This document shows, one piece after another, positions 19,814-59,084 of a stretch of DNA of 64,000 nt. This DNA is from Thecamonas trahens ATCC 50062 (taxonomy: Eukaryota; Protista; Apusomonadida), in NCBI RefSeq assembly GCF_000142905.1, contig NW_013657616.1, forward strand, positions 1-64,000, given 5' to 3'. Made by a program: the position numbers and the translations under genes. Positions within the stretch are counted from its first letter, which is position 1; each line of letters begins with the position of its first letter. The notes under the pieces are model-generated. The model saw only the letters and a program-made list of their open reading frames with translations. It did no database searches and had not been told where the DNA came from.

Positions 19814-20911
19814 ATGGCAGACGACGACACCCTCCCGGCAACCATCACCATTGCGTTCAAGTACAAGAAGGAGACCTTTACGCTGAGCTTTGAGCCGACA
19901 GACTCGGTCCTTGCCGTCAAGACGCACCTGTTCACACACCTCCACATCCATCCGCACCGGCAGAAGCTCATCGGCCTGCGCCATGCCGAGACCAAAAAGA
20001 TGCCTCAGGACGAGGACTTGCTAGAGGACTTGGTTTTCAAGGCCACAAAGGGCGGCCACAAGGTGTTTGTCTCTGGCACGCCTGACGACGACCTCTTTGT
20101 CGATCCCGTCGATCTCGACGCCGACGACTTGCCCAACGTCGTCAACGACCTCGACTTTGACTACTTTCCCTCGGCAGAGACCTCTTCATCGCTCGCCGAC
20201 TCGCCCGAGGTCCAGGCCAAGCTCGACAAGGCCATCGCCGATGTCGACATCCGTATCCTCAATCCGCCGCGCGAGGGCAAGAAGCTGCTTGTCCTCGACC
20301 TCGACTACACCCTCTTCGACATGAAGAGCACCGCAGAGTCCATCAACGAGCTCAAGCGCCCGTTCCTCGAGGAGTTTATGACTCTCGCCTACCAGCACTA
20401 CGACATTGTCATCTGGTCCCAAACAAAGTGGACCTACCTCGAGATGAAGCTCACCGATCTCGGCCTCCTCACCTCGGACGCCTTCAAGCTCATGTTTGTC
20501 CTTGACATCTCATGCATGTTCTCCGTCCGCTCCATGTACAAGGGCAAGCCGCGGACTCACCAGGTCAAGGCCCTGCCCATCATCTGGGCCCACTTTCCCG
20601 ACCGCTTCGGCCCGCACAACACCGTCCACATCGACGACGTCTCCCGCAACTTTGCCGTCAACCCACAGCAGGGCCTCAAGATCAAGGCCTTTAAGCGTGC
20701 CGCTGTCAACCGCGCCACAGACCGTGAGCTCTTCCGTCTCTCCGCCTACCTCATCCACCTCGCTACCTCGGTCCCGGACTTTCGCTCGCTTGACCATGCC
20801 CGCTGGAAAAAGGTGGTCAAGAAGATCATCACCTCGGCCTCGGTCACCAATCCCGCCGGGGCCTCGTCGTCGTCCTCCTCCTCCAACCCCGACCCCAATT
20901 CCACCTCGTGA
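19814..20911 (+). CDS. UBLCP1: Ubiquitin-like domain-containing CTD phosphatase 1
   Basis: N-terminal UBL (HPHRQKLIGL), NPPREGKKLLVLDLDYTLFD with the DxDxT HAD motif, and DDVSRNFAVNPQQGLKIKAF. Confidence 0.95.
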   Translation: MADDDTLPATITIAFKYKKETFTLSFEPTDSVLAVKTHLFTHLHIHPHRQKLIGLRHAETKKMPQDEDLLEDLVFKATKGGHKVFVSGTPDDDLFVDPVDLDADDLPNVVNDLDFDYFPSAETSSSLADSPEVQAKLDKAIADVDIRILNPPREGKKLLVLDLDYTLFDMKSTAESINELKRPFLEEFMTLAYQHYDIVIWSQTKWTYLEMKLTDLGLLTSDAFKLMFVLDISCMFSVRSMYKGKPRTHQVKALPIIWAHFPDRFGPHNTVHIDDVSRNFAVNPQQGLKIKAFKRAAVNRATDRELFRLSAYLIHLATSVPDFRSLDHARWKKVVKKIITSASVTNPAGASSSSSSSNPDPNSTS

Positions 20912-21111
20912 TCGTACAACTTTGCCCCGCCCCCACATGCCCGCCTCACATGCCCTCGTCAGCCTTGGTGCTACGGTAAACTCACGGCTCATCCTCTAAA
21001 AATATTGGTTGGCCGTCCCCAGTCTCGACACCCGCAAACGTTCCCTGACCCGCACTCCCCTGTCCATTCACCCTCCACCACTCATCGCCACCTCACCCAG
21101 AGCGTCGCACC

Positions 21112-24100
21112 ATGACCCTGATGCGGCTCCTGTCCCTCACTCTGCTGGCAGCACTCACTCTCCCTGCCACAGACTGTCAGGAGACGTACGGCGAGCCCAC
21201 GCTCCGCTTCTTCACCTTCTCCTCGTCCGAGTCGCAGTTTACCTACGTCGCCCTCTCGACTGTCAATGATTACAACAACCATGTCAACCGCACCAACGCC
21301 GTTGAACTCTATCGCTTCGAGCACACGGACATCCTTGATCGATCAGTCTACAAGCGCTGGTTAGACACCCTTGGTGCTCCGGATCTCCTTCCGCTCTACA
21401 CTGGCCCACGTGCGAGAGAGTTTCTCGACGCAGGCAAAATGTCCGACCTGAGCGATGTGTGGGACGAGACCGGCCTCCACGGTGACGTCCTCCCACTCGC
21501 AGACGCTCTCGTTTCGGGCCAGGCCGGGGAAAAGTTCGGCATTCCGCTCCTTGCTACAGGCTCTATGTGCATGTACCGCAAGTCCGTCTTTCGCACCATC
21601 GGCGTCTCCACCCCACCGCAGACCTGGGACGAGCTCCTCGCCCTCTGCCAGGCCTTTGCCGACGTCGGCATCCCCTGCCTCGGCAACGACCTCGCCACTC
21701 TTCCGCCGACTCAGTACTTTGACTCGCTCGCCATTCGCATGCACGGTAACGAGTTTTACGCAAACTTTACCGATGCCGGTATCTCCTTCACAGACCCACG
21801 CGTGCTCGCCGTCTTTGACGAGCTTATTCCGCTCGTCGGCAAGGGCTACTTTGCTCGCACTCCCTCGCCAAGCCCGGGCCTCGATCGCGTTCTCGTCGAC
21901 ATCTCTGCTCTCGCACTTGATCGCGCTGCTGTCATCTGCGGTCTCGAGTCGGTCTCGCCCGTTCTCCTCGCCATGGGCATTCCTAACGACGACATCTCCG
22001 TCTTTGCTTTTCCGGTCGTTGACCGTGCGAGTCACCCACCGCCACTGCCGGGCCAGACACAGACACTTCGGCCTTACTCGGCATCGTCGGCATCGTCGGC
22101 CTCCCCACCAATGCCGCCCATCCACACGAGGCTCGAGACTTTCTACGCCTCGTTGCTCGCGCGTCTTCGATGGCCCGCCATCTCGCCAACTCACCTGGCA
22201 TCGTCCCACTCCGCACCTCGCTTGGCGCCCATCTCACCAGCAACCGCTCGCGCCTTGTCTACAACGCCCTCTCCTCCACTCCCATTCTGTATCAGCGGAG
22301 TGGTCTGGCCGGCTTTGGCTTTACCTCCATTTTTGCCGGCTGGTCCTCCCTCATCCTTCGCATCTTCTCCGCCGCAAACAATGCCGAGGCCTACGCTGTC
22401 CTCGACGCCAGCCTTCCCGAGCTCGAGGCGCTCCGGGTCCGACTCGTTCTCGGTCAAGCCGCACAGCCCGAGTTCTCGCCCCGATCGGGTGCTTTTGCTT
22501 CAGCTGTCACGCTCACGCTCTCCTCGCCCGAGGAAGGTGCCGTCATCTACTTTACCCTCGATGGCTCGGAGCCGTCGTTCACTTCGTCTGTCTACTCTGA
22601 GCCCATCCGCATCGCCACCTCGGACACCGTCACCGTCCGCGCTACTGCCGCCGTCCAGGGCCTCTCGCTCGCTACCCCGGCTTCTGCCACCTACGTCGTC
22701 AACATCCCGCCGGCCACAGACTCGGGCTCAGTCCGCCTCTCGCTCCTGCTCGCCATCGTCATCCCGGTCACTCTCGTTTGCTGCGGCATCTGCGCCGCTG
22801 TCGGCTACGTCATCTACCGTCGCAAGTCGGTCACCTACACCCTCGTCTCGGACGCCGAGCTCGTCATCCCGCCCGAGAACCTCCGCGTCCTCCACGTCGT
22901 CGGCCGCGGCTCGTACGGCACCGTCTACGCCGGGACATGGCGCGCCACGAGCGTGGCCATCAAGCGCATGCATGCCAAGGTGCTCGGCCCACGCGAGCTC
23001 TCCGAGTTTGTGGACGAGGCCCACACGCTGCACCTCCTCCGCCACCCGAACATTGTCATCTTTATGGGTGTCACGCTCGAGCCGCCGGCCATTGTGACCG
23101 AGTTTATGGATCGCGGCTCGATGTACGAGGTCCTCCACACGGCCGAGTTGTTCCTCGACCCGTCGATGGTCTTCAAGTGGCGCACAACATCGCACAGGGA
23201 CTGCAGTACCTCTCGCATGCCGGGATTGTANNNNNNNNNNNNNNNNNNNNNNNNNNNNNNNNNNNNNNNNNNNNNNNNNNNNNNNNNNNNNNNNNNNNNN
23301 NNNNNNNNNNNNNNNNNNNNNNNNNNNNNNATCGCCACCTCGGACACCGTCACCGTCCGCGCTACTGCCGCCGTCCAGGGCCTCTCGCTCGCTACCCCGG
23401 CTTCTGCCACCTACGTCGTCAACATCCCGCCGGCCACAGACTCGGGCTCAGTCCGCCTCTCGCTCCTGCTCGCCATCGTCATCCCGGTCACTCTCGTTTG
23501 CTGCGGCATCTGCGCCGCTGTCGGCTACGTCATCTACCGTCGCAAGTCGGTCACCTACACCCTCGTCTCGGACGCCGAGCTCGTCATCCCGCCCGAGAAC
23601 CTCCACGTCCTCCACGTCGTCGGTCGCGGCTCGTACGGCACCGTCTACGCCGGGACATGGCGCGCCACGAGCGTGGCCATCAAACGCATGCATGCCAAGG
23701 TGCTCGGCCCACGCGAGCTCTCCGAGTTTGTGGACGAGGCCCACACGCTGCACCTCCTCCGCCACCCGAACATTGTCATCTTTATGGGCGTCACGCTCGA
23801 GCCGCCGGCCATTGTGACCGAGTTTATGGATCGCGGCTCGATGTACGAGATTCTCCACGCACCGGACCTCGCCATCGACAACTCGATCGCTCTCAAGTGG
23901 GCGCACAACATCGCACAGGGACTGCAGTACCTCTCGCATGCCGGGATTGTACACGGCGACTTTAAGTCGCTCAACGTGCTCTTTGACTCGTCGTGGGTGC
24001 CCAAGATCTGCGACTTTGGCATGGCGTCGGTCAAGAAAGGCAACACTATTGTTGCCGACGGCAAGCTTGTGGCCAAGGGCCGGGCCATCAAGCACACTGA

Positions 24101-26750
24101 CTCGGGTGTGGTTTCTGCCGCCGGCTCGTCAAGCATTCTCGCTTCGCGGCCGTCGTCGCTGCCGTCAAACGCCGCCTCGCGCTTTCTCGCAGAGTCGTCG
24201 TACCTCGTCACCCAGTCGCTCTCTGGCGACGGCTCGGTCATGCACTCGGCAGCCAACGTGGGAACGGTCTTCTGGGCCGCGCCCGAAGTCCTCACCTCGG
24301 GATCCTGTGCCATGACCACTCAGTCTGACGCGTATGCCCTGGGCATTGTCCTCTGGGAGATTGCGACCCGCGAGGATCTCTATCCTGGCGAGAACGTCCT
24401 CGCCGTCGCCCTCGAGATCCTCGAAGGTCGCCGGCCTGACACCACCTCGATCCCCACCGCGCTCTCGGGCATCATCCCGGTCATTTCCGCTCTTTGGGCC
24501 CAACGAGCCTCGGACCGCCTTGATCTCGACGCCGCCGTCGCCAAGCTCGGCACGCTTTACTCGCCTGAAAATGTGACCTATCCGTCGTCGCTCTCAACGC
24601 CGACCGGCTCGCTCATCGTCGTCCATTGCGTCCTCCGCAACGCGCGCGCCATGCTTCTTGTCAACATCGACGACACCATCGCCCGTCTCCGCATGTTCCA
24701 CGACTCGTTCCCGCATCTCGCCAAGGCTGCCGCTGTCACCATCCTCCAATGGGGGCTTGGTTGGGTCACTCTCGGCGTCCACCGTCCGAGCCAGCTGCCG
24801 GACGTCCTCTTCCTCGTCGAGTCGCTCGCTTCCTCAGAATCGGGTCCCATCGCCATGCTCGTTGCTGAGGGCACCATCGTCTCTTCGAAGGACTCTTTCG
24901 GACACCACACGCTCGGCGGGCCTGTCATCGAAACGCTGCGCGCCAGCTGGGCCACTATGTTTGGCACCAAGGGCTCCGGCTTTGACACCCTCTCCCCGCA
25001 GACTGGCATCGGTACAAACGCCCGCCAGCGTTCACCCCCGCCGCTGGCGGAAGCATGGGACCACGCCGTTCCGGGCGGTATGTTCATCGCCACGACGACT
25101 CTCGCCAACCAGCTCAAGTCCTTGTCCAAAATCCAAGTCATCCGCATCCCTTGGCTCGTCAACGATGAGCCGGTCTTTCAGCTTGTCGACGCCTCGGGCG
25201 TTGCCGTCACAGACGTGGCCAAGCCCATCACTGCTCGCGACTACCGTACCCACTCGGACGAAGCCATCGACAGCAATGCCGATAACGACCTTGGCTCGTT
25301 GGGCTCACGTCCGCCGCTTCCGCCGACCGCCGCCGCTACACCCTCGGCCGTCACCCGCGCCGCCGCCGCCCTCGACGACCTGCTCGTCAACTCGGCAGAC
25401 TTACAAGACTCGGCACTGGTGTGCTCGCTCGACGTTGACGACAACTCGCACTCCCCTGACTCATCGACGTCGTCCCCCGCATACGCCGCCCAGCCGAGCT
25501 CGGATCACCGCCCGGGACGCTCGACCATGGCCGTCACCAAAAGCAATTTTACCGCAGAGTCGAACTCAAACATCTCGCCGTCGCAGCCGCTGGCTCCTAC
25601 CGTCCAATCACCGCCACTCTCGACATCGGGCGGCTCGGTGATGCTCCGGTCGTCCGGCGCGTCAAACCGTCACTCCTCGCCATCCTCGTCATCCTCGTCA
25701 TCCTCGTCATCCGCTCTTGACACTGCCTCGTCGTTGTCGGAAGCAGAGGAGCAGATGGAAAACGCCGTCGGCCGCGAGTTCTCAAGATGGGACCTTCCGC
25801 GCTGGGCCGTCCTCCACATGATGGAGGCGTGCGGCGACGCATGGCTCGGCTCGATGGCCATGGCCTACGAGGCCGTGCTCTCGGGCCAGCCAGTAGTGGT
25901 CAAGGTCCTTCTCCGGCAGAAGATGTCGCCTGGCGACCTGGTGAGCTTTGCCGAGGCCGCCGCCCGTGCTACGCTCGCGTCGGCGGTTGGCGTTGTCGGC
26001 CCCATCGCGGTTTGCCTCGACGCGCCGCTGCTCGCAGTCGTCAATCCGCGCTACGACACCGGCTCGCTTCACGACGCCATGACTGGAGTCTCGCCGCTGG
26101 TTCTCGATCGGCGTGGGTCGTACGCAGTGGCCACGTCGATGACCGAAGCTCTGGCCAAGCTACACGCCGAGACAGGGCGTGCCCACGGAGCGCTGCGCCC
26201 GACCAACGTGGTACTGGTCGGCGCCAACGGCTCCATCCTCTCAGCCCACGTCATTGACTTTGGCTTTGGAGAAGTCAAAACCTCGCTCGGGACGCAGACC
26301 ATGGTTCCGACCGTGGCGTACATGTCGCCGGACGACCTGCGCGGGAGCCTCGACTCGATGCCTGGTGACGTCTTTGTCGTCGGCACACTCCTCTACGAGA
26401 TGCTGACCGGGCTCTCGGCATTTGCTGGCCGCAACGCTATCGAGGTCTCGCACGCCATCATTTCCGGTGAGCGGCCTCAGCTCACCGAAGCAGAAATCGA
26501 GTCGCAGGCCATGCGCCGCCTCATCGCCTCGTGCTGGCTCTCGGACGCAGCTGCGCGTCCGACCATGGCCGAAATCGCTACCCAAGTCGCCGCCCTCGAC
26601 GTCACCGACTTTGTCCAGACCGGTCCCGCTGCCCGTGTCGCCGCCGAATCTGCTGCCCGCGTCGCCGCCGCCACCAAAGCCGCTACTGCCAAAAAGGCCC
26701 GCACACCCCGCCATGCCCATCGCCGCCTCTCATCGGTCTCCGTGGCGTAG
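21112..26750 (+). CDS. Receptor kinase RK1: signal peptide, sugar SBP, CHB_HEX_C-like, TM, TKL kinase, degenerate cyclase, pseudokinase (spans an assembly gap; may be two genes)
   Basis: Signal peptide; SBP motifs APDLL..LSDVW, MYRKSVF..PQTWDELL and FTDPRV; IYFTLDGSEP; TM LLLAIVIPVTLVCCGICAAVGYVIY; kinase motifs GRGSYG, VAIK, HGDFKSLN, DFG and APE. Frameshift at 22035-22037. Gap 23231-23330 is flanked by duplicated sequence. Confidence 0.8.
23231..23330. other. Assembly gap (100 N)
   Basis: N run. Confidence 1.
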
Positions 26751-27048
26751 AGTCTGAAGGCCGTTTGTTGGCAGGTAAGGACTGCGGGTCAAGTATGTCA
26801 CGGCGCACCACCCCCCTCCCCCCTCCCTCCTTCCATCAACCAATGTTCCTCAATTTAACCACCACCACACAAACGCAATCATCTGCACTCCCGCTCTTAG
26901 CCGATGACCCGCAAGCGCACACACGCACACACACACATACACACACACACACACACACACGGCTCGCCATCCCATTCCCCGTCCCCACTCCCCACACAAC
27001 CGAAACCAACTCTCGCAGCATTTGAAATCATTGTGGTTGTGGTCAGAA

Positions 27049-30000
27049 ATGGGTTTGGGCATGGCTATCAGACGTGCAACGTTCGTCTTTGTCGCGGTCG
27101 TGGTCGTAGCGCTTCTTGTGCAAGTCGCATCGGTCGGAGCAGTTGATGACCAGACGGGTCAACCCGATGTGGCAAACCCGACACCATCGACCTTGGCACC
27201 ATCCTCGGCATCGTCCTCGCCCGCATCAGTCAATGCCATGGCCAGTCGATCGTCGTCAACCACACCCGTCGCCCAGTCATACCATCCAACAACGCTCCGC
27301 ATGCACATGCACTCGGCGCCCAACTCTCAATTCACTCTCGTCGGCATCGCCATGGCAGACTACTACAACGCGTACATGAACGGATCGTCGTCGATCTCCG
27401 TCCTCCGCTTTCCCTTCACCAAACTACTGGATCGGTCCAACTTTGCTAGTTGGCTCACAACGCTGGGCGCGCCCGATGTGCTGCCGCACTTTCAAGGCCC
27501 GCGGCCGAACGACTTCTTTGACGACGGCCTCCTAGAGGACTTGACCGACATCTGGGACGAGTACGGCCTCCATGATGACGTCTTGCCGCTAGGCATTGAG
27601 GCGTCCACCGGATCGGATGGCAAGAGGTACCAGGTCCCCATGATAGCGGCCGGCTACATGTGCATGTACCGCGCCTCCATCTTCGACACCTTTGACATCT
27701 CCCCGCCGGTGACATGGATCGAGCTTCTTGCAGTCTGTGCCAAGTTCAAGGCGGTCGGCATTCCGTGCTTCGGCACCGATCTCGACGGCGTGCCCCCCAC
27801 TCAATACTTTGACTCGCTCGCCATCCGCATGCACGGCAACGAGTTCTACGCCGCCCTCTTTGACGCCCAGATCCCGTTTGACGATCCGCGCATCCTGGCC
27901 GTCTTTGACGAGCTCGCCCCGCTGCTTGATCTTGGCTACTTTGGCCTCGAGCCATCGTCGATCCCCGGCGTCAGTCATCAGGTCGTTGGCATTCCCGCCC
28001 TTGCCCGTGGTGAAGTTGCCATTGTCTGCGGCATCGAGTCGGTCTCGGCCTATGTCGGTCTCTTTGGTGTGCCTGACGACGACATTGCTGTGTTTCCCTT
28101 TCCTTCGTTTGATGCCTCCCATCCGGCCGCAACCGCCGGGCCCAAGAGCGATACCTCGGCAGCACTTGGTGTCCTCGGCATTATGGGCGTGCCATGTAAT
28201 GCTGCGTTCATTGACACTGCCAAAGACTTTGCCCGGCTCATGGCCGACAAGTCGGCCATGGCCACTATCCTCGCCAACCGCCCTGGCATCGTCCCACTGC
28301 GGTCCTCGCTCGCGTCTCTTCTCACTACCAACCGCTCACGGCAGGTCTACGAGACCCTGGCATCGGCCCCAGTCGTCCTCCGCAGCACCGGTATCGCTGG
28401 CTTTGGCGAGCCTGCTATCTTCATGGAGTGGGCCAACCTCGTCTTTAGCTTTTATGCCGGTAACAACGCCGCCGAGTCTCGTGCAGTCCTCGACACTACC
28501 CTCGTTGTTCTCGAGTCGCTGCGCCTGAGACTCGTCCTCGGTCAAGCCGCACAGCCCGAGTTCTCGCCCCGATCGGGTGCTTTTGCTTCAGCTGTCACGC
28601 TCACGCTCTCCTCGCCCGAGGAAGGTGCCGTCATCTACTTTACCCTCGACGGCTCGGAGCCGTCGTTCACTTCGTCCGTCTATCTTCGGCCCATCCGCAT
28701 CGCCACCTCGGGCACCGTCACCGTCCGCGCTACTGCCGCCGTCCAGGGCCTCTCGCTCGCTACCCCGGCTTCTGCCACCTACGTCGTCAACATCCCGCCG
28801 GCCACAGACTCGGGCTCAGTCCGCCTCTCGCTCCTCCTTGCCATCGTCATCCCGGTCACTCTCGCTTGCTGCGGCATCTGCGCCGCTGTCGGCTACGTCA
28901 TCTACCGTCGTAAGTCGGTCACCTACACCCTCGTCTCGGACGCCGAGCTCGTCATCCCGCCCGAGAACCTCCGCGTCCTCCACGTCGTCGGCCGCGGCTC
29001 GTACGGCACCGTCTACGCCGGGACATGGCGCGCCACGAGCGTGGCCATCAAGCGCATGCATGCCAAGGTGCTCGGCCCACGCGAGCTCTCCGAGTTTGTG
29101 GACGAGGCCCACACGCTGCACCTCCTCCGCCACCCGAACATTGTCATCTTTATGGGCGTCACGCTCGAGCCGCCGGCCATTGTGACCGAGTTTATGGATC
29201 GCGGCTCGATGTACGAGGTCCTCCACACGGCCGAGTTGTTCCTCGACCCGTCGATGGTCTTCAAGTGGGCGCACAACATCGCACAGGGACTGCAGTACCT
29301 CTCGCATGCCGGGATTGTACACGGCGACTTCAAGTCGCTCAACGTGCTCTTTGACTCGTCGTGGGTGCCCAAGATCTGCGACTTTGGCCTATCGTCGGTC
29401 AAGAAGGACGGCAGTCTCGCCGACGCTCCGCTGGTGACCAAAACCCCGCGAGGCGCAGCAATCGCAGCAGCTGCTTCAGATTCGTTCTCTACTCTCGCAG
29501 CTGGGTCGGCATTGTCGATCGGCTCGGTCCGGCTCGGCTCGGTGCCGTTTTCATCTCACGCACTCTCCGATGGCAGCGAGGAGCAGCTGCAGCTTGCGGC
29601 CAACGTGGGGACAGTGTTTTGGGCTGCGCCCGAGGTGCTTGTTAAGGGCAAGGAAGCGCTGACGACCGAGTCAGATGCGTATGCGCTCGGGATCACCTTG
29701 TGGGAGCTGGCGACACGACAGGACCTCTTCCCGCGCGAGAACGTGCTTGCTGTTGCCCTCGAGGTGGTCCACGGGCGGCGGCCTCCTGTCGAAGCTGTCC
29801 CCGCCTCGTGCGCCGGCATTTTGCCCGTCATGAAGGCACTGTGGAATGGCGATGCCGCCAACAGGATGCGGCTCGACGAGGCTGTCGAAGCGCTTGGTGG
29901 GCTGTACTCTCCGGAGCAGGTCATCTACCCCTCATCGCGGTCGGCGCCGTCCGGAAACATCATTGTCTTGCACTGCGTCATCCGCCATGTTCGCGACAGG

Positions 30001-32064
30001 CTGTTGACTGACATCGACAACGCCGTGACTCAGCTCAGGGTGTTCCACGACGCAATGCCGCAGCTTGCAAAAGCGTCGTCCATCACTATTCTTCAGTGGG
30101 GCCTCGGCTGGGTCACCTTTGGCGTCCACCGCCCGAGTCAACTCCTCAACTTTCACTTCCTCATCGCTGACAAAGTCGGGCCCGTCACCATGCTTGCTGC
30201 CGAGGGCACCATTGTGGCCTCCAAGGACTCGTTCGGTCATGAGGCTCTGGGGGGGCCAGTCATGGCCACCATTGCCACCCGCTGGGCTTCCATGTTTGGC
30301 ACTTGTGGCTCGGGCTTTGATGCCCTCAAGCCCCAGACCAGCACCACGACACAAAGCTCGGCCTCGCCGCTGCTCTCGGACGCTTGGCAGCACGCGGTGC
30401 CCGGTGGGATGTTTGTGGCCACAGAGGGCCTCGCTACTCAGATCCGCGAACTTGGCCAAACCAAAGTGGCCAAGATCCCGTGGCTCGTCGAGGGTGAACC
30501 AGTCTTCCAAGTCGTTGACTCTACCGGTGTCGCTGTCGCCGACGCTGCCAAGCCGCTCACTGCACGCGATCGGTCGAACGGTCCACATGCTGTCGCTCCG
30601 TCCGGCACGACTGCGGTCGGCCACAACGGTGAGCTGGTCATCTCCGCCCCCGACCGTCGCAGCCGTCCACCACCCTCCGGCAGTGAGAGCCATCGGAGCC
30701 ATCGGACAGCAAGTACAGCACGGTCGTCGGCTGCCCTGGACGACCTTCTCGTCGGCTCAACCGAGTTTCACGACTCGGCCATCGCCATGTCCCTCAATCT
30801 GGGTTCGTTGAGCAACACCGCGAGTCGGACAAGTCTGCCACATCCCGACGCCACCAAAATCACGCCGGGTCCGGGCTCATTGTCGACGTCATCATCGTCG
30901 TCAAGCTCTGTGCCGTCGGAGGGCGAGAACAGGACAAACGGTTCGCCGACCACAATCGGTGCCCCTGGCAGTTCCAGCTTGGCCTCGTCGTCGTCGGATA
31001 ATTCATCGTCGTCGGTGGCGGTGTCGTCAGCGTCGACATCGTCGTCATTGTCCGACGAGGAGCAGCTCGAGGCTCAGGAGTCGCTTGAGCTCTCCAAGTG
31101 GCACCTGCCACGGTGGGCAATTGTGGCCATGATGGAGAACTGTGGCGGCGCATGGCTCGGCTCGATGGCCATGGCCTATGAGGCCGTGCTCTCAGGCCAG
31201 CCAGTAGTGGTCAAGGTCCTTCTCCGGCAGAAGATGTCGCCTGACGACCTGGTGAGCTTTGCCGAGGCCGCCGCCCGTGCTACGCTCGCGTCAACGGTCG
31301 GCGTCGTCGGACCCATCGCGGTTTGCCTCGACGCGCCGCTGCTCGCAGTCGTCAATCCGCGCTACGACACCGGCTCACTCCACGACGCCATGACCGGAGC
31401 CTCGCCGCTGGTTCTCGATCGGCGAGGCGCACATGCAGTGGCAACGTCGATGACTGCCGCGCTGACCAAGCTACACGCCGAGACAGAGCGTGCCCACGGA
31501 GCGCTGCGGCCGTCCAACATCTTCCTCGTCGGCTCCAACTCCACCATCATCTCGGCACACGTCACCGACTACGGGTTCACCACCGTCAAGACCACCCTCG
31601 GGACTCAGACCATGGTCCCAACTGTGGCGTACATGTCGCCGGATGAGCTCCGTGGAAACCTCGACTCGATGCCTGGCGACGTTTTTGTCGTCGGCACGCT
31701 CCTCTACGAGATGCTCACCGGGCAAGTCGCCTTCTCGGGGCGCAACGCCATTGAGGTCTCGCAGGCCATGGTTTCGGACGCCCGGCCGTCGCTCACGGAC
31801 GCCGAGATTGTCTCCCCCATCCTACGCCGCATCATCGATGAGTGCTGGGCCTCCAAGCCTGCATCACGGCCCACCATGAGTGAGCTGAGCAAGCAGCTCG
31901 CGGCACTCAAGGTCGACGACTTTGTCCAGACCGGCGCCGCAGCTCGCAACGCCAACGAGACCGCAGCTCGCATCGAGGCTACCCGCAAGAAAAAGCGCGG
32001 CGTCAACTCACTCTCGCAGATGCGCCGTGGCATCCAGAGCGATCCTAGAGCCATGTCCTCGTAA
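27049..32064 (+). CDS. Receptor kinase RK2 (intact single ORF, same architecture as RK1)
   Basis: Uninterrupted ORF of about 1670 aa with N-terminal hydrophobic segment, SBP, IYFTLDGSEP, TM, HGDFKSLN kinase, cyclase-like PSGNIIVLHCV..QWGLGW, Ser-rich linker, and a second kinase fold (HGALRPSN/DYG). Confidence 0.92.
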   Translation: MGLGMAIRRATFVFVAVVVVALLVQVASVGAVDDQTGQPDVANPTPSTLAPSSASSSPASVNAMASRSSSTTPVAQSYHPTTLRMHMHSAPNSQFTLVGIAMADYYNAYMNGSSSISVLRFPFTKLLDRSNFASWLTTLGAPDVLPHFQGPRPNDFFDDGLLEDLTDIWDEYGLHDDVLPLGIEASTGSDGKRYQVPMIAAGYMCMYRASIFDTFDISPPVTWIELLAVCAKFKAVGIPCFGTDLDGVPPTQYFDSLAIRMHGNEFYAALFDAQIPFDDPRILAVFDELAPLLDLGYFGLEPSSIPGVSHQVVGIPALARGEVAIVCGIESVSAYVGLFGVPDDDIAVFPFPSFDASHPAATAGPKSDTSAALGVLGIMGVPCNAAFIDTAKDFARLMADKSAMATILANRPGIVPLRSSLASLLTTNRSRQVYETLASAPVVLRSTGIAGFGEPAIFMEWANLVFSFYAGNNAAESRAVLDTTLVVLESLRLRLVLGQAAQPEFSPRSGAFASAVTLTLSSPEEGAVIYFTLDGSEPSFTSSVYLRPIRIATSGTVTVRATAAVQGLSLATPASATYVVNIPPATDSGSVRLSLLLAIVIPVTLACCGICAAVGYVIYRRKSVTYTLVSDAELVIPPENLRVLHVVGRGSYGTVYAGTWRATSVAIKRMHAKVLGPRELSEFVDEAHTLHLLRHPNIVIFMGVTLEPPAIVTEFMDRGSMYEVLHTAELFLDPSMVFKWAHNIAQGLQYLSHAGIVHGDFKSLNVLFDSSWVPKICDFGLSSVKKDGSLADAPLVTKTPRGAAIAAAASDSFSTLAAGSALSIGSVRLGSVPFSSHALSDGSEEQLQLAANVGTVFWAAPEVLVKGKEALTTESDAYALGITLWELATRQDLFPRENVLAVALEVVHGRRPPVEAVPASCAGILPVMKALWNGDAANRMRLDEAVEALGGLYSPEQVIYPSSRSAPSGNIIVLHCVIRHVRDRLLTDIDNAVTQLRVFHDAMPQLAKASSITILQWGLGWVTFGVHRPSQLLNFHFLIADKVGPVTMLAAEGTIVASKDSFGHEALGGPVMATIATRWASMFGTCGSGFDALKPQTSTTTQSSASPLLSDAWQHAVPGGMFVATEGLATQIRELGQTKVAKIPWLVEGEPVFQVVDSTGVAVADAAKPLTARDRSNGPHAVAPSGTTAVGHNGELVISAPDRRSRPPPSGSESHRSHRTASTARSSAALDDLLVGSTEFHDSAIAMSLNLGSLSNTASRTSLPHPDATKITPGPGSLSTSSSSSSSVPSEGENRTNGSPTTIGAPGSSSLASSSSDNSSSSVAVSSASTSSSLSDEEQLEAQESLELSKWHLPRWAIVAMMENCGGAWLGSMAMAYEAVLSGQPVVVKVLLRQKMSPDDLVSFAEAAARATLASTVGVVGPIAVCLDAPLLAVVNPRYDTGSLHDAMTGASPLVLDRRGAHAVATSMTAALTKLHAETERAHGALRPSNIFLVGSNSTIISAHVTDYGFTTVKTTLGTQTMVPTVAYMSPDELRGNLDSMPGDVFVVGTLLYEMLTGQVAFSGRNAIEVSQAMVSDARPSLTDAEIVSPILRRIIDECWASKPASRPTMSELSKQLAALKVDDFVQTGAAARNANETAARIEATRKKKRGVNSLSQMRRGIQSDPRAMSS

Positions 32065-32354
32065 CAGGCAACCAATTGCAGCCTGAAATTGAGAGGCGCA
32101 CGCAAACAATTTGGACTCTGTTAAATTGGTGATTTAATCACGGCGAGCGGAATATTTGTCATACCTAACCAACCCGCACCCCCCAACACCCGCAACCTGC
32201 CAGCCCAGCGTTGCCAACACCAGGACACCCCTCCTCAGCCGAGTCACTCAAGCCCGGTGAGAACCGAGCAAACAAGCTGTCAATGAGCAGACGCGGCCAC
32301 GGCGAGGGCAGTACAAGATGGAGCAAGGACTCAAGGCGCATCATACACACACCC

Positions 32355-35300
32355 ATGCCTCTTGTCTCCCTCATCCTTGCCATGTTTGTTCTCCTCCTTC
32401 CTATTGGCCAACTCACCCGAGCAAGTGACGCCCCAGTCAGTATGGGTCGCGCCAATTTGCGCATGCATGTCTACTCTGCGCCATCATCTCAATTCACCCT
32501 TGTCGGCGTGGCCATGGCAGAGTACTACAACGCACACGTCAACGATTCAAGTCATATTGACGTCATTCGCTTCCCTCTGCAGCAACTTCTCGATCGATCG
32601 ATCTACTCGTATTGGGTCGACGCGCTCGGTGGTCCAGACGTCTTGCCGCTCTTTCAAGGTGCGCGGGCGAAGGAGTTTGTCGATAGTCACCTCCTCGTCG
32701 ACCTTACTGATGTGTGGGATGAGACTGGCCTCACCGGTGACGTTTTTCCGCTTGTGGATGACGCTGTCACAGACTCGAGTGGCCAGGGCAGGTACGCCGT
32801 GCCCACTCTCGGCTCGGGCTCTATGTGCATGTACCGCGCATCGGTCTTTGCCGCCCACGGCGTCCAGCCTCCGGCGAGCTGGAAGGCCCTCCTCGAGCTC
32901 TGTGCCGTCTTTCATGCTGTTGGCATTCCTTGCTTTGGCACCGATCTCGAGACGCTGCCGGTCTCGCAGTACTTTGACGGGCTCGCGGTGCGGATGCACG
33001 GCAACATGTTCTACGCTGACTTTTTCGACGGTCATGTCTCGTTCACTGACCCGCGAGTGCTTGCCGTCTTTGAGGAGCTCATCGATCTCATCGAACTCGG
33101 CTACTTTGGCATGCAGGCATCGTCGCTGCCTGGCCTCTCCAGCGAAGTGGTGAGCTTTGGCGCGCTCGCCCGCGGCGACGTCGCCGTCATTTGCGGTCTC
33201 GAGTCGCTCTCACCATACCTCACGCTGTTTGGCGTGCCCGACGATGACGTCCTTGCCTTTCCCTTTCCCACTGTAGCTCGGACCCACCCGCGGGCCACTG
33301 CCACGGCTGAGACCGACACCTCGGCAGCACTCGGGGTTCTGGGCATCATGAGCATCCCAAAGAACGCCGTCTATCTGGCCGAGGCCAAGAACTTTGCGCG
33401 GATCACCATGACCAGGGAGGCGACAACCGCCATTCTGGCCAACCGGCCTGGTATGGTTCCGCTCCGTAGGTCGATGGCTTCACTCCTCACCACCAACCGC
33501 TCTCGGCAGGTCTTCGACATGTTTGCCTCGTCGCCAATCCTCCTCCGCAACTCGGCGCTGGTCGGCTTTGGCATCCCCGCGGTCATCGACGGTTGGTGGC
33601 AAACGCTACTTCGATTCTACTCGGCACCCAACGGCGCTGAGGCCCGTGCTGGGCTCGTCAGCGATCTCGCCGCAGTCGACGCGCTCCGAGTCCGACTTGT
33701 CCTCGGCCAGGCTGCGCAGCCCGAGTTTACTCCTCCGTCGGGCACGTTTTCCAACACGGTCAGCGTCGTCATTTCGTCGTCCCAGGACGATGCCGTCATC
33801 TACTTTACCCTCGATGGCTCGGAGCCGTCGTTCACTTCGTCTGTCTACTCTGAGCCCATCCGCATCGCCACCTCGGACACCGTCACCGTCCGCGCTACTG
33901 CCGCCGTCCAGGGCCTCTCGCTCGCTACCCCGGCTTCTGCCACCTACGTCGTCAACATCCCGCCGGCCACAGACTCGGGCTCAGTCCGCCTCTCGCTCCT
34001 CCTTGCCATCGTCATCCCGGTCACTCTCGCTTGCTGCGGCATCTGCGCCGCTGTCGGCTACGTCATCTACCGTCGCAAGTCGGTCACCTACACCCTCGTC
34101 TCGGACGCCGAGCTCGTCATCCCGCCCGAGAACCTCCGCGTCCTCCACGTCGTCGGCCGCGGCTCGTACGGCACCGTCTACGCCGGGACATGGCGCGCCA
34201 CGAGCGTGGCCATCAAGCGCATGCATGCCAAGGTGCTCGGCCCACGCGAGCTCTCCGAGTTTGTGGACGAGGCCCACACGCTGCACCTCCTCCGCCACCC
34301 GAACATTGTCATCTTTATGGGCGTCACGCTCGAGCCGCCGGCCATTGTGACCGAGTTTATGGATCGCGGCTCGACGATACAGGTCACCCGTCATACCGTC
34401 GCAAGTCGGTCACCTACACCCTCGTCTCGGACGCCGAGCTCGTCATCCCGCCCGAGAACCTCCGCGTCCTCCACGTCGTCGGCCGCGGCTCGTACGGCAC
34501 CGTCTACGCCGGGACATGGCGCGCCACGAGCGTGGCCATCAAGCGCATGCATGCCAAGGTGCTCGGCCCACGCGAGCTCTCCGAGTTTGTGGACGAGGCC
34601 CACACGCTGCACCTCCTCCGCCACCCGAACATTGTCATCTTTATGGGTGTCACGCTCGAGCCGCCGGCCATTGTGACCGAGTTTATGGATCGCGGCTCGA
34701 TGTACGAGGTCCTCCACACGGCCGAGTTGTTCCTCGACCCGTCGATGGTCTTCAAGTGGGCGCACAACATCGCACAGGGACTGCAGTACCTCTCGCATGC
34801 CGGGATTGTACACGGCGACTTCAAGTCGCTCAACGTGCTCTTTGACTCGTCGTGGGTGCCCAAGATCTGCGACTTTGGCCTATCGTTGGTCAAGAATGAT
34901 GTGGCTGGTGGTAGGCCTGTGGCGCCTAGTGCAGTGCAGACGTCTGATGCGGCTCTCTCATGGGCAATGCCGTTTACGAGGCATGATTCGGTCAAATCGT
35001 CCCGCGGCTGGGCGACTGGGGCGGTCGACAGCTCTCGTCTGGTATCGGTCGAGGCCGATGATGGCTCCGAGTTAATGACGATGAACACGACCGGGACGAT
35101 GTTCTGGGCGGCACCCGAGGTGCTGATGGGCGGCAAGGAAGATTTGACCACCGAGTCTGATGCGTTTGCCCTGGGTATTACGCTGTGGGAGTTGGCAACG
35201 CGCGAGGACCTGTATGCCGGGGAGAACGCGCTTGCAGTGGCGTTGCAGGTAGTGGGCGGGCGGCGGCCGGAGATTGCGATTGTGCCGTCGGGACTGGTGG

Positions 35301-37284
35301 GGCTGGTCCCGGTCATGACTGCGCTCTGGGCGGCTGAAGCGAGCGAGCGGATCAGCCTTGACGAAGCGGTGAATGAGCTTGCTGGTATGTACTCTGCAGA
35401 ACAGGTGGTGTATCCGTCAACGCCCGAGGTGCCGTCTGGCCGAATCATTGTGGTCCACTGCGTGATGCGCGGGGTGCGCGATGAGCTGCTGCGGAACGTG
35501 GATCGCTCTGTGGAGCGCCTTCGTGCCTTTCACCAGAGCATTCCGTGGATGGCGCAGGTGGCATCGGTGGCGATCTTGCAGTGGGGCCTCGGGTGGGCCA
35601 CGCTCGGCCTCCACCGGCCTAACCAGCTCTTGGACTTGCTGTTGATGCGAACAGTCGAGGTGGGGGCGGTGACAATGATGGCTGCTGAGGGGGTGATTCT
35701 TTCGTCGCGCGACGGGCGTGGGCACAAGCAGCTGGGTGGTCCGGTGATGGAGACGCTGCAGTCGTGCTGGGTGGAGATGTTTGGCCCGAGCGGCTCGGGC
35801 TTTGACGGCTTTCGGCCAGAGACGGCTTCTAATGCGAATGTGTCGGTCTCACGACCGCTGCTCTCCGAGTCGTGGAGCCATGCGGTGCCCGGCGGTCTGT
35901 TTGTGACATCGATGGAGCTTGCGAGTCAGATCAAGAAACGTGACGGCGTGCAGGCTGTCCGGCTGCCATGGCTAGTCCACGGCGAAGTGGTGCACCAGGT
36001 CGTGGTGCATGACGAGGTGTCGGTCTCAGAGGTGGCGCGGCCGTTGCGGGCTGGCGAGTCGTGGAACTGTAACAGCGACGAGTCGGTGGTCCTGGCAGAT
36101 GCAGCGACAGAGGTTGATGCCGGGGATGAGCTTGTGCCTAACCTCATGGCTGTGGCATCGATTCCGCTTGAGGCGCGTGATGGTTCTGCGGCCAAAGTGA
36201 TGTGCTCTCACTCTGTCGGGGCGGTCATGATGGCTGGCCCTGGGACAAGCAGTGTCATCTCACCATCTCCGTCGACGTCAACAGTGTCGTCGTCGTCGTC
36301 GTCGTCTTTGTCATTGTCGTCGTCTTCGCCATCGCTGTCGTCAGGAGAAGAGCAGGTCGAGTTGACCGAGTCGATGGTCCTCCCTGACTCGCCGAGCCGG
36401 TCGAGGCAGCTGGTCAAGTGGGAGCTACCGCGCTGGGCAGTGGTGAGCATGATGGAGTCGTGCGGGGAAGCGTGGCTCGGCTCGATGGCAACAGCCTACG
36501 AAGCGGAGCTCCAGGGCCAGCCGGTGGTGGTCAAGGTCCTGCTGCGGCAGAAGATGTCGCCGGACGAGCTGGTGAGCTTTACCGAGGCCGCTGCCCGTGC
36601 TACGCTCGCGTCGGCGGTCGGCGTCGTCGGCCCGATTGCTGTCTGCCTCGACGCGCCGCTGCTCGCAGTCATTAATCCGCGGTACGACACAGGCTCGCTC
36701 TACGACAGCATGACGGGCATCTCGCCGCTAGTGCTCAACCGCCGCGGCGTGCACACTGTGGCAAAGTCGATGACTGCCGCGCTGGCCAAGCTCCACACCG
36801 AGACAGGGAGGGCGCACGGATCGCTGCGGCCGACCAACGTGATGCTCGTCGGGGCGAACCGGGCGATCATTACAGCGCACATCATCGACTTTGGCTTTGG
36901 AGAAGTCAAGTCCTCGCTTGGGACGCAAACCATGGTCCCAACCGTGGCGTACATGTCACCGGATGATCTGGGCGGCGAGATGGACTCGATGCCCGGCGAT
37001 GTGTTTGTGGTCGGCACGCTCCTCTACGAGATGCTGAGCGGCGAGCAGGCGTTCGAAGGCACAAACGCCATTGAGGTCTCGCGCGCCATTGTGGTCGGGA
37101 CGCGGCCAGCTGTGACCTCAAGCGAAGCCCGTTTGCAGCCGTCCGTGAGCTCATCCGCGACTGCTGGCAGCCGCATGCGCACATGAGGCCATCAATGTCC
37201 GAGCTCGCCTCCCGAATCGCCGCACTTACGGTGAGCGAGTTTGAGCTCTCACCGCGGGCAATGGACAAGTACGGCAGTGGCTGA
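32355..37284 (+). CDS. Receptor kinase RK3 (same architecture; internal kinase N-lobe duplication and a late frameshift)
   Basis: ORFs 32211-34676 and 34031-37186. About 307 bp is duplicated across the junction at 34375-34393. One extra C at 37128-37130 restores ELIRDCWQPHAHMRPSMSEL through TGA 37284. Confidence 0.8.
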
Positions 37285-41984: not shown

Positions 41985-42033
41985 GGGGCTGGCGTGAAGT
42001 GGTGGGGGAGGTGGGGGTGGGGGGTGGGGGCTG

Positions 42034-56059: not shown

Positions 56060-56117
56060 GGGTCGCAGCGAGTTGAGTGATGGTGTCATAGCAGGCTGAG
56101 GTGATGCTGGCGAGAGA

Positions 56118-56556
56118 ACGATTAATTGAACGATTGATTGAACGATTATGTGGACGATTATGTGGACGATTAATTGAGCGATTGATTGAACGATTATGTG
56201 GACGATTAATTGAACGATTGATTGAACGATTATGTGGACGATTAATTGAACGATTGATTGAACGATTATGTGGACGTTTATTTGGACGATTGATTGAACG
56301 ATTATGTGGACGTTTAATTGAACGATTGATTGAACGATTATGTGGACGTTTATTTGGACGATTGATTGAACGATTATGTGGACGTTTAATTGAACGATTG
56401 ATTGAACGATTATGTGGACGTTTAATTGAACGATTGATTGAACGATTATGTGGACGTTTATTTGGACGATTGATTGAACGATTATGTGGACGTTTATTTG
56501 GACGATTGATTGAACGATTATGTGGACGATTAATTGAACGATTGATTGAACGATTA
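56118..56556. repeat. AT-rich 12-bp variant minisatellite (acgattaattga / acgattgattga / acgattatgtgg / acgtttatttgg), about 36 units
   Basis: Directly visible. Confidence 0.95.
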
Positions 56557-56627
56557 TCGGGTTAGATCAACGACAACGCACAGCGGTACACACATGACTT
56601 GCCTCTCATCGGCGGGACTGGTCCTGT

Positions 56628-57859: not shown

Positions 57860-57962
57860 GACGGTGGAAGGGGGGGTGTGTGTGGGGGGTAGGGGGGGGG
57901 GGGGGGAGGGAAGGGGGAAGGAAGGAGACGACGACGAGGAGGAGGAGAAAACCTAGCTCGTT

Positions 57963-58988: not shown

Positions 58989-59084
58989 CCGCCCGTTTTC
59001 GTCGTCGTCGTCATTGTTCGCTCGTTTTCGCCTTTACTCGATTTGGTGCTGTGCTGGTTGCGGTCGGGGTGCGGAGGATGGAGA

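What the first reader, a model, noticed from the sequence alone, without database searches (positions are those of the whole stretch)
21112..37284. Tandem array of receptors coupling a bacterial-type sugar-binding domain to kinase, dead cyclase and pseudokinase
Seen: three consecutive same-strand genes share the order signal peptide, ~420-aa ectodomain, IYFTLDGSEP stalk, one TM, kinase, ~200-aa domain, Ser-rich linker, second kinase fold. Established: the ectodomain motifs (APDV, LEDLTDIW, YRxSxF, PxTWxELL, YFDSLAIRMHG, FxDPRV) are those of bacterial carbohydrate ABC solute-binding proteins (SBP_bac_1/8). Kinase-cyclase-kinase receptors are known in Acanthamoeba and Mimivirus. Inference: a lineage-specific sugar or glycan sensing receptor family, possibly for prey detection, built from a horizontally acquired binding domain.
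Basis: partly seen in the sequence, partly recalled or inferred. Interest (0 to 1): 0.85.

Follow-up and report, generated by a model that had tools for sequence, protein, structure and literature searches.

The report
Sugar-binding receptor kinases, dead cyclase inside
Three neighbouring genes of the marine flagellate Thecamonas trahens encode cell-surface receptors that join a bacterial-type sugar-binding domain to one working kinase, a dead cyclase and a dead kinase. This is an undescribed offshoot of the kinase-cyclase-kinase receptors known from amoebae and giant viruses.

Summary
Window 21112-37284 carries three same-strand paralogs in Thecamonas trahens ATCC 50062. Each has a signal peptide, a ~420-aa carbohydrate solute-binding fold (Z 38 to AcbH), a CHB_HEX_C stalk and one TM helix. 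Inside the cell come a non-RD kinase, a class III cyclase-fold domain (Z 14.9) with both metal-binding Asp replaced, a Ser-rich linker and a pseudokinase (HGA instead of HRD, no Gly loop).

The N gap is an assembly artefact. Contigs from three DNA metagenomes and one RNA run join 23172 to 23893 (720 letters, in frame) and carry an extra C after 22034. Read that way, gene 1 is one 1639-codon frame. The two breaks in gene 3 are untested.

The genome holds about 30 genes with this intracellular module, about 21 of them behind this ectodomain. A ~750-900-bp core (stalk to kinase N-lobe) is 96-100% identical among the three genes (dS 0.04-0.06, against 1.2-1.5 in the ectodomains), which indicates gene conversion.

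True kinase-cyclase-kinase receptors (giant viruses, unnamed metagenome and NCBI proteins) also carry periplasmic-binding-protein ectodomains, so this is a new variant of a known kind. Sugar binding and bacterial origin are inferred, not shown. The scan found this family before on other DNA of this genome.

The parts
21112..26750 (+). Gene 1 (RK1). It reads as one 1639-codon frame once the assembly artefacts are set aside. The NCBI model AMSG_12385 fuses it to the upstream NIF-phosphatase gene.
22034..22035 (+). One-base deletion in the assembly. Independent contigs carry an extra C here, which restores the frame of the gene 1 ectodomain.
   Evidence: table 4 (X2 DNA, X5 RNA)
23173..23892 (+). 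Assembly artefact. It consists of the end of a duplicated stalk-TM-kinase N-lobe copy, the N gap (23231-23330) and the start of the second copy. Independent contigs skip these 720 letters, and the reading stays in frame.
   Evidence: tables 5 and 8
27049..32064 (+). Gene 2 (RK2). It is an intact 1671-codon ORF counted from the first ATG. It corresponds to NCBI 'extracellular solute-binding protein family 1' (P0001, 1653 aa), whose model removes one intron at about 30664-30720.
27061..27144 (+). Signal peptide of gene 2 (N-terminal hydrophobic stretch).
27295..28551 (+). Gene 2 solute-binding ectodomain (SBP_bac_1/8, carbohydrate type). The equivalents are 21202-22463 in gene 1 and 32457-33716 in gene 3.
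28567..28746 (+). CHB_HEX_C_1 / Fn3_assoc stalk carrying IYFTLDGSEP. The equivalents are 22479-22658 in gene 1 and 33732-33911 in gene 3.
28783..28869 (+). The single transmembrane helix, followed by YRRK.
28954..29907 (+). Kinase 1. It keeps the Gly loop, VAIK, HGD (non-RD), DFG and APE, and has a long variable activation-loop insert. The equivalents are 22866-23172 plus 23893-24560 in gene 1 and 34445-35392 in gene 3.
28540..29400 (+). Homogenised core (stalk to kinase N-lobe). It is 96-100% identical in DNA among the three genes, against 55-70% in the flanks. dS is 0.04-0.06 here and 1.2-1.5 in the ectodomains. This is a gene-conversion tract.
29944..30576 (+). Dead class III cyclase homology domain. 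The equivalents are 24600-25241 in gene 1 and 35432-36052 in gene 3.
30577..31191 (+). Ser-rich low-complexity linker.
31204..32001 (+). Kinase 2, a pseudokinase. It has HGALRPSN instead of HRDLKxxN and no Gly loop, but keeps VVVK and DYG. The equivalents are 25893-26624 in gene 1 and 36524-37126 in gene 3.
32352..37284 (+). Gene 3 (RK3). It has the same domain order, but in the assembly it is interrupted by a tandem duplicate and a late frame change.
34056..34711 (+). Two ~326-bp copies of the juxtamembrane and kinase N-lobe segment in gene 3, joined by a 19-nt filler (34375-34393) that is unique in the genome. Whether this is real or an assembly artefact is not settled.
37126..37141 (+). One-base frame change near the gene 3 C-terminus. 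The homologous reading continues in another frame to the stop at 37282-37284. Untested.

Best explanation
The region is a tandem trio, made by local duplication, of type I membrane receptors. They belong to a family of about 30 genes in Thecamonas trahens.

Shown:
- Outside the cell sits a two-lobed carbohydrate-type solute-binding (Venus-flytrap) domain on a CHB_HEX_C/Fn3-like stalk.
- Inside the cell come a kinase with all catalytic motifs (non-RD), a class III cyclase-fold domain without its two metal-binding Asp, a Ser-rich linker, and a kinase fold without catalytic Asp or Gly loop.
- All domains are under purifying selection.
- The stalk-TM-kinase N-lobe core is kept nearly identical among the three genes by gene conversion, while the ectodomains have diverged to 53-59% amino-acid identity.
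- The intracellular module is homologous to the kinase-cyclase-kinase receptors of giant viruses and their relatives.

Inferred:
- A mono- or oligosaccharide closes the binding domain.
- The change is passed through the stalk and TM helix to a dimer held by the dead cyclase domain (class III cyclase domains work as dimers).
- Kinase 1 is the only catalytic output. The pseudokinase acts as an allosteric or docking partner, and the Ser-rich linker as substrate or scaffold.
- Different paralogs read different sugars through one shared signalling core, for nutrient or prey-derived glycan sensing in this bacterivore.
For: Architecture.

SBP domain:
- Pfam finds SBP_bac_1 in 15 of 19 paralogs and SBP_bac_8 in 13 of 19.
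- The ectodomain profile matches PDB AcbH at E 6.7e-31 across columns 6-369. It also matches BxlE, the chitin-oligosaccharide binders NagB1/B2 and xylo-oligosaccharide binders.
- The AF2 model has pLDDT 92 and pTM 0.90. VIA-align gives Z 38.1 to AcbH over 382 of 388 residues, Z 34 to the BxlE-xylobiose complex, and Z 30-32 to glucose/galactose and chitin-oligosaccharide binders.

Dead cyclase:
- hhalign of a 28-sequence middle-domain profile against true cyclase domains of kinase-cyclase-kinase receptors gives probability 95%, E 3.8e-8, 120 columns.
- In that alignment the FTD Asp corresponds to V and the GD Asp to L.
- No Asp stands at metal site 1 in any of the 28 members.
- The AF2 model has pLDDT 82. 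All top Foldseek hits are class III cyclases at probability 1.00. VIA-align gives Z 14.9, rmsd 2.5-2.8 Å, over 152-153 of 162-163 residues.

Kinase motifs.

Selection and gene conversion: (dN/dS 0.13-0.33 in every domain).

Family size.

Tandem origin: the three ectodomains form one clade with SH-aLRT 99.

Relatives with live cyclases and PBP-type ectodomains.

Gene 1 is continuous, and its corrected form is present in an RNA library.
Against: - No ligand, kinase activity, dimerisation or expression in culture was measured.
- The binding-pocket residues were not compared with those of AcbH or BxlE, so 'sugar' rests on the ligands of the nearest solved relatives at only 16-22% identity.
- Gene 3 may really be disrupted.
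- The RNA run is a metatranscriptome kept as contigs and may contain DNA.
- The dimer-scaffold role of the dead cyclase domain and the allosteric role of kinase 2 are analogies, not tests.
Confidence: 0.7

Rival explanations
1. The ectodomain no longer binds free sugars. It has been turned into an adhesion, phagocytic or surface-glycan receptor (or binds a non-carbohydrate solute), so the family serves contact recognition of prey or substrate rather than soluble nutrient sensing.
For: - Identity to the nearest solved sugar binders is only 16-22%.
- The family-specific conserved Cys (C125, C150, C160, C247 of the ectodomain alignment) and the long stalk show remodelling for a cell-surface role.
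- Sister receptors in the same genome use TIG or PBP_like_2 ectodomains, so the module accepts many kinds of sensor.
Against: - The whole two-lobe fold is kept with high model confidence.
- Its closest matches are all carbohydrate binders across the full length.
- dN/dS of 0.27 in the ectodomain shows constraint.
Confidence: 0.2
2. Part of the array is decaying: gene 3 is a pseudogene, disrupted by a real 326-bp tandem duplication and a late frameshift.
For: - The assembly shows both lesions.
- The 19-nt filler at the junction is unique in the genome. It looks more like a repair junction than a simple failure to merge overlapping contig ends.
Against: - Both kinds of lesion in gene 1 (a one-base frame change, and a duplicate in the same homogenised core) proved to be assembly errors when independent contigs were laid.
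- Away from the breaks gene 3 has no stops, and dN/dS against gene 2 is 0.13-0.33.
Confidence: 0.25
3. The N gap hides one or more further receptor paralogs, so 'gene 1' is the head of one gene joined to the tail of another.
For: - Both gap flanks are copies of the same core segment and differ by 4%.
- The left flank is 99% identical to a gene 3 copy.
Against: - Contigs from three DNA metagenomes and one RNA run pass directly from the left copy into the right copy, skipping exactly 720 letters.
- The joined reading is a single open frame with the family's normal domain order.
- These contigs come from environmental populations, not the sequenced strain, so copy number in ATCC 50062 itself is not strictly proven.
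Confidence: 0.07
4. The middle domain is still an active nucleotidyl cyclase that uses non-canonical residues.
For: - The fold is intact.
- The domain is under purifying selection.
- A few paralogs have Glu at metal site 1.
Against: - Both metal-binding Asp are replaced by hydrophobic residues in the three window genes.
- Pfam Guanylate_cyc finds none of the 14 middle domains scanned.
- The same genome has at least 50 cyclase domains that do score, and none lies at a receptor locus.
Confidence: 0.03

Closest known systems
Kinase-cyclase-kinase receptor nucleotidyl cyclases of Acanthamoeba castellanii (66-67 genes), Physarum polycephalum (43) and amoeba-infecting giant viruses (PMC4053784, PMC4758236, PMC5804921, PMC5203793)
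   Same: - They share the order: extracellular sensor, one TM helix, kinase, class III cyclase-fold domain, second kinase.
- After the family itself, kinase 1 finds such receptors next (Moumouvirus, Pandoravirus, Diphylleia; 34-38% identity, E 1e-60 to 1e-76).
- The middle domains align profile to profile.
- Several of these receptors also carry bacterial periplasmic-binding-protein ectodomains: PBP_like_2, Peripla_BP_6.
- They form large, amplified gene families.
   Different: - In this family both metal-binding Asp of the cyclase are lost, and Pfam no longer recognises the domain.
- Kinase 2 has lost the catalytic Asp and the Gly loop, whereas the viral and other K-C-K receptors examined keep HRD, DFG and the Gly loop in both kinases.
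- Kinase 1 is non-RD (HGD).
- The ectodomain is SBP_bac_1/8 plus CHB_HEX_C_1. That combination was seen only in T. trahens and unnamed marine metagenome proteins.
Bacterial CUT1-type carbohydrate ABC solute-binding proteins: AcbH (3OO6-3OOA), BxlE (3VXB/3VXC), NagB1/NagB2, xylo-oligosaccharide and glucose/galactose binders
   Same: The full two-lobe fold is shared (Z 30-38, about 380 aligned residues). The profile match reaches E 6.7e-31. Pfam SBP_bac_1/8 scores above its cut-off.
   Different: - The domain is fused in one chain to a stalk, a TM helix and kinases. It does not serve an ABC permease.
- It has eukaryotic-style conserved Cys.
- Identity is only 16-25% and no close bacterial donor was found.
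Animal receptor guanylyl cyclases (GC-A/ANP receptor) and trypanosome receptor adenylyl cyclases (comparison from general knowledge; both structures appear among the fold matches)
   Same: All are single-pass receptors with a periplasmic-binding-protein-like ectodomain outside and a kinase-fold plus cyclase-fold pair inside. The cyclase domain forms dimers.
   Different: The division of labour is inverted. In GC-A the kinase fold is dead and the cyclase is the output. Here the cyclase and the second kinase are dead and the first kinase is the output. The ectodomain also belongs to another PBP class (ANF_receptor type there, SBP_bac_1 here).

Membership tests
Kinase-cyclase-kinase (K-C-K) receptor family | Extracellular domain, one transmembrane helix, intracellular module | tested here: met
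   An N-terminal hydrophobic signal and a single hydrophobic segment at aa ~588-616 of gene 2.
Kinase-cyclase-kinase (K-C-K) receptor family | Order: kinase, then class III cyclase-fold domain, then kinase | tested here: met
   Two kinase regions found by Pfam. The middle domain has the cyclase fold: Z 14.9, Foldseek probability 1.00, hhalign 95%.
Kinase-cyclase-kinase (K-C-K) receptor family | Sequence kinship of the intracellular module with recognised members | tested here: met
   In the exhaustive search, the next-best multi-domain hits after the family itself are Moumouvirus, Pandoravirus and Diphylleia receptors. Most of those scanned carry Pfam Guanylate_cyc between two kinases.
Kinase-cyclase-kinase (K-C-K) receptor family | Catalytically competent cyclase (two metal-binding Asp; recognised by Pfam PF00211) | tested here: not met
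   Asp 1 is replaced by V and Asp 2 by L. There is no PF00211 hit in gene 2 or in the 14 middle domains.
Kinase-cyclase-kinase (K-C-K) receptor family | Second kinase with HRD, DFG and a Gly loop | tested here: not met
   HGALRPSN and no Gly loop, conserved across the paralogs.
SBP_bac_1 / SBP_bac_8 carbohydrate solute-binding proteins | Profile match above the curated cut-off | tested here: met
   The gene 2 ectodomain scores 43 bits for SBP_bac_1 and 39 bits for SBP_bac_8. 15 and 13 of 19 paralogs match.
SBP_bac_1 / SBP_bac_8 carbohydrate solute-binding proteins | Two-lobe periplasmic-binding-protein fold over the full length | tested here: met
   AF2 pLDDT 92. Z 38.1, rmsd 3.6 Å, 382 of 388 residues aligned to AcbH.
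SBP_bac_1 / SBP_bac_8 carbohydrate solute-binding proteins | Works as the free or lipid-anchored partner of an ABC importer | tested here: not met
   The domain is fused in one ORF to a stalk, a TM helix and kinases. The neighbouring genes are a NIF phosphatase and an F-box protein, not permeases.
SBP_bac_1 / SBP_bac_8 carbohydrate solute-binding proteins | Binds a carbohydrate in the inter-lobe cleft | not testable with these tools
   This rests only on the ligands of the nearest solved relatives: galactose, xylobiose, xylo- and chito-oligosaccharides, glucose.
Active eukaryotic protein kinase (kinase 1) | Gly loop, VAIK Lys, catalytic Asp and Asn, DFG, APE | tested here: met
   GRGSYGTV, VAIK, HGDFKSLN, DFG and APE are present in all three genes. 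The Arg of HRD is replaced by Gly, making the kinase non-RD.
CHB_HEX_C_1 / Fn3_assoc domain | Profile match above the curated cut-off | tested here: met
   54.1 bits (cut-off 22) and 37.3 bits (cut-off 23) at aa 516-575.

The most novel reading that the evidence does not exclude
Apusomonads run a repertoire of about 30 surface receptors. Gene conversion keeps one shared signalling core (stalk, TM helix, non-RD kinase), while bacterial-type binding domains (about 21 sugar-type, others phosphate-type or TIG) diversify. This would be a protist chemosensory or innate-recognition system for prey- and environment-derived glycans. It would have been built by turning a cyclase receptor into a pure kinase receptor whose dead cyclase and dead kinase survive as scaffolds.
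Probability: 0.3. Interest if true: 0.75.

Novelty: new variant of a known kind. Interest (0 to 1): 0.55.

Why it matters
It would extend the kinase-cyclase-kinase receptor design beyond Amoebozoa and their giant viruses. The Acanthamoeba genome paper called that design unique for a cellular organism (PMC4053784). Here it appears in an apusomonad, a lineage near the root of animals and fungi.

It shows an evolutionary end state in which two of the three enzymes have died yet remain conserved.

It gives a defined set of natural, diversified sugar-type binding domains wired to a kinase. That set is useful for asking how heterotrophic flagellates sense food, and as parts for biosensors.

It is a clear case of a conserved signalling core with diversifying sensors in a tandem array.

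It also corrects the public assembly and gene models at this locus.

Tried and rejected
- Pfam and a PDB sequence-profile search on the middle domain gave nothing. Only an enlarged profile, hhalign and structure prediction resolved it.
- The search for homologous proteins with the ectodomain, alone or as an alignment, gave only weak bacterial hits (E 1e-13 to 1e-4) and one metagenome fragment. No donor could be named.
The bacterial sampling in the tree is therefore only 9 sequences, and the tree is the quick version, not the careful one.
I could not check whether T. trahens also has K-C-K genes with a live cyclase.
- The protein Atlas was busy.
- The idea of a hidden paralog in the gap was considered and rejected.
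- A viral origin of the array was considered and rejected. GC content matches the genome, and family members are spread over at least 20 contigs.
All searches used single-frame pieces by reference. The joined reading of gene 1 (with N at the missing base) was only checked for stops inside a script.

Full report
**Where and what**

The window is contig C64 of a 28.7-Mb, 131-contig genome. Gene 2's product is identical to an NCBI protein of Thecamonas trahens ATCC 50062 named 'extracellular solute-binding protein family 1' (P0001).

Three + strand genes fill 21112-37284. The flanking genes are unrelated: a NIF phosphatase with a ubiquitin-like domain upstream and an F-box protein downstream.

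**The gap, tested first**

In the assembly only gene 2 (27049-32064) is an intact ORF.

Gene 1 changes frame at ~22034 and at ~23180. It contains the N gap at 23231-23330. The 620 bases before the gap (22611-23230) are 96% identical to the 620 after it (23331-23951).

I laid Logan contigs of three DNA metagenomes (X2, X3, X4) and one metatranscriptome (X5) on 21100-26900.
- X2 and X5 carry an extra C after 22034.
- X2, X4 and X5 join 23172 directly to 23893, and X3 joins 22964 to 23685. Each joint skips 720 letters, which is 3 x 240.
- Nothing lies on 23331-23815 in X2, X4 or X5.

With N at the missing base and the 720 letters skipped, gene 1 is one open frame of 1639 codons with a single terminal stop. 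So the letters on the two sides of the gap are overlapping copies of one segment that the assembler failed to merge. They are continuous and in frame, and no paralog is hidden there.

One caveat applies. The contigs come from environmental populations, not from the sequenced culture.

The NCBI model AMSG_12385 (P0002, 2115 aa) is gene 1 fused to the upstream phosphatase gene. It bridges the breaks with modelled introns.

Gene 3 has a ~326-bp tandem duplicate of the juxtamembrane and kinase N-lobe segment. The two copies are joined by a 19-nt filler (34375-34393) that occurs nowhere else in the genome. Gene 3 also has a one-base frame change near 37126-37141. Both lesions resemble the artefacts found in gene 1, but I could not test them.

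**Ectodomain**

- Pfam finds SBP_bac_8 and SBP_bac_1 above their cut-offs in gene 2 and in most of 19 paralogs.
- A profile of the 19 ectodomains matches the solved bacterial sugar binder AcbH at E 6.7e-31 over nearly its whole length. It also matches BxlE, the chitin-oligosaccharide binders NagB1/B2 and xylo-oligosaccharide binders.
- AlphaFold2 gives a confident model (pLDDT 92, pTM 0.90).
- The best structural matches are AcbH (Z 38.1, 382 of 388 residues), the BxlE-xylobiose complex (Z 34) and a xylo-oligosaccharide binder (Z 33.6).
- Glucose/galactose binders (Z 31-32) and chitin-oligosaccharide binders (Z 30) follow. All are carbohydrate ABC solute-binding proteins.

The fold claim is therefore met.

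Four Cys are conserved across the family. This fits an extracellular eukaryotic domain.

The stalk is a CHB_HEX_C_1/Fn3_assoc domain (54 bits). One hydrophobic helix follows it.

**Kinase 1**

The Gly loop, VAIK, HGDFKSLN, DFG and APE are present in all three genes and in most paralogs. There is a long, variable insert in the activation segment. Kinase 1 is a non-RD kinase and is predicted to be active.

**Middle domain**

Pfam and a PDB sequence-profile search see nothing here. A Pfam Guanylate_cyc scan of the whole genome finds at least 50 true cyclase domains, none at a receptor locus.

The exhaustive protein search supplied the bridge. After the family itself, the next-best multi-domain matches are receptors of Moumouvirus, Pandoravirus, Diphylleia rotans and unnamed sequences. 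Most of those scanned have a Pfam-recognised Guanylate_cyc domain between two kinases.

A 28-sequence profile of the Thecamonas-type middle domain hits exactly those cyclase domains, in the same order of residues. hhalign gives probability 95%, E 3.8e-8 over 120 columns.

In that alignment the first metal-binding Asp (FTD) corresponds to Val (HCV). The second (GD) corresponds to Leu (WGLGW). No family member has Asp at the first site.

AlphaFold2 (pLDDT 82, pTM 0.78) gives a fold whose top matches are all class III adenylyl or guanylyl cyclases. Foldseek probability is 1.00. VIA-align gives Z 14.9, rmsd 2.5-2.8 Å, over 152-153 of 162-163 residues of Ma1120 and Rv1900c.

The domain is a dead cyclase homology domain.

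**Kinase 2**

- HGALRPSN replaces HRDLKxxN, and there is no Gly loop.
- VVVK and DYG/DFG are kept.
- The pattern holds in nearly all paralogs.
- The viral and other kinase-cyclase-kinase receptors I examined keep HRD, DFG and a Gly loop in both kinases.

Kinase 2 is a conserved pseudokinase.

**Selection and gene conversion**

dN/dS between the three genes is 0.13-0.33 in every domain, including the two dead enzymes.

Synonymous divergence is 1.2-1.5 in the ectodomains but 0.04-0.06 in the stalk-TM-kinase N-lobe core. DNA identity there is 96-100%, against 55-70% in the flanks.

A second, weaker tract covers the N-lobe of kinase 2 (dS 0.4-0.6).

A drop of this size at synonymous sites points to gene conversion, not constraint alone. 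It also explains why the assembler failed exactly there.

**Family and distribution**

- The ectodomain finds about 25 places in the genome, and the dead cyclase domain about 30. About 21 loci have both.
- Twenty fetched paralogs keep the full domain order.
- The same dead module also sits behind PBP_like_2 (phosphate-binder type) and TIG ectodomains in T. trahens.
- All named proteins with the SBP_bac_1 architecture are from T. trahens. Others are unnamed marine metagenome proteins with the same Pfam order.
- One such Tara contig has GC 0.59-0.62, and its neighbouring gene is 61% identical to a T. trahens gene. It probably comes from another apusomonad.

In a quick tree the three window genes form one clade (SH-aLRT 99). 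The eukaryotic sequences separate once from the nine bacterial ones (support 88). Environmental sequences interleave with T. trahens paralogs. The bacterial sampling is too thin to name a donor. The best bacterial matches are about 25% identical.

**Literature**

Acanthamoeba has 66-67 receptors with an extracellular domain, one TM helix and a cyclase flanked by two kinases. They were called unique for a cellular organism and shared with giant viruses (PMC4053784, PMC5203793). Physarum has 43 (PMC4758236, PMC5804921). I found no paper on such receptors in Thecamonas, nor on their solute-binding ectodomains.

**Mechanism**

The anatomy above is shown. The rest is inferred.
- A sugar or oligosaccharide closes the flytrap.
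- The signal passes through the stalk and TM helix to a dimer organised by the dead cyclase domain.
- Kinase 1 is the sole catalytic output.
- Kinase 2 and the Ser-rich linker act as regulator and docking or substrate region.
- The paralogs differ in ligand but share one core.

**Verdict**

This is a real, well-defined receptor family and a new variant of the known kinase-cyclase-kinase kind. The scan had already found other members on other DNA of this genome (s1-743405, s1-744796, s1-749603).

Noticed in passing
window 19814-26750: The public gene model AMSG_12385 (P0002, 2115 aa) is a chimera. It joins the upstream NIF-phosphatase/ubiquitin-like gene (19814-20842) to receptor gene 1, and it bridges the assembly errors with modelled introns.
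   Followed up: yes
window 34375-34393: A 19-nt filler sits at the junction of the gene 3 tandem duplicate. It is unique in the whole genome. Its origin is unknown: it could be a repair junction, a chimeric read or a real insertion.
   Followed up: partly
G000, about 9 loci, e.g. C1:268837, C49:27291, C13:550225, C39:42439: The same kinase / dead cyclase / pseudokinase module also occurs behind other ectodomains in T. trahens: PBP_like_2 (phosphate-binder type; P0113, P0125, P0104) and TIG (P0033). In P0113 and P0104 an Asp stands near the second metal site, which may be an intermediate stage of cyclase decay.
   Followed up: partly
G000, 50 places: T. trahens has at least 50 Pfam-recognised class III cyclase domains, many in open frames of 1000-1900 aa. 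I could not check whether any lies between two kinases (a live K-C-K receptor), because no more genome letters could be fetched.
   Followed up: no
P0097, P0102, P0120, P0115, P0080, P0151, P0101, P0149: Kinase-cyclase-kinase-type receptors use a wide set of ectodomains.
- PBP_like_2: Moumouvirus P0097; Pandoravirus P0102 and P0120 (the two Pandoravirus proteins also have EGF).
- Peripla_BP_6: unnamed protein P0115.
- 5_nucleotid_C: unnamed proteins P0080 and P0151.
- DUF4215: unnamed protein P0101.
- Kelch propeller: Diphylleia rotans P0149.

Pfam Guanylate_cyc was found in P0097, P0120, P0115, P0080 and P0101, but not in P0102, P0151 or P0149. The bacterial-binding-protein nature of these sensors does not seem to be discussed in the papers I found.
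   Followed up: partly
window 25562-25755: Contig depth peaks sharply over the Ser-rich linker of gene 1: 86 in X2 and 22 in X5, against about 5 elsewhere. This is probably cross-mapping of low-complexity sequence from other genes or organisms.
   Followed up: no
window 56001-60000 and 40001-42000: Composition outliers in an otherwise ~63% GC window. GC falls to 0.47-0.55 at 56-60 kb and rises to 0.72 at 40-42 kb.
   Followed up: no
L050 (Tara marine metagenome contig, 11.7 kb): An environmental ortholog of the receptor family sits among compact eukaryote-like genes (ubiquitin-like, PhyH, bestrophin). The PhyH neighbour is 61% identical to T. trahens C45:99040-100251, which points to an uncultured relative.
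   Followed up: partly
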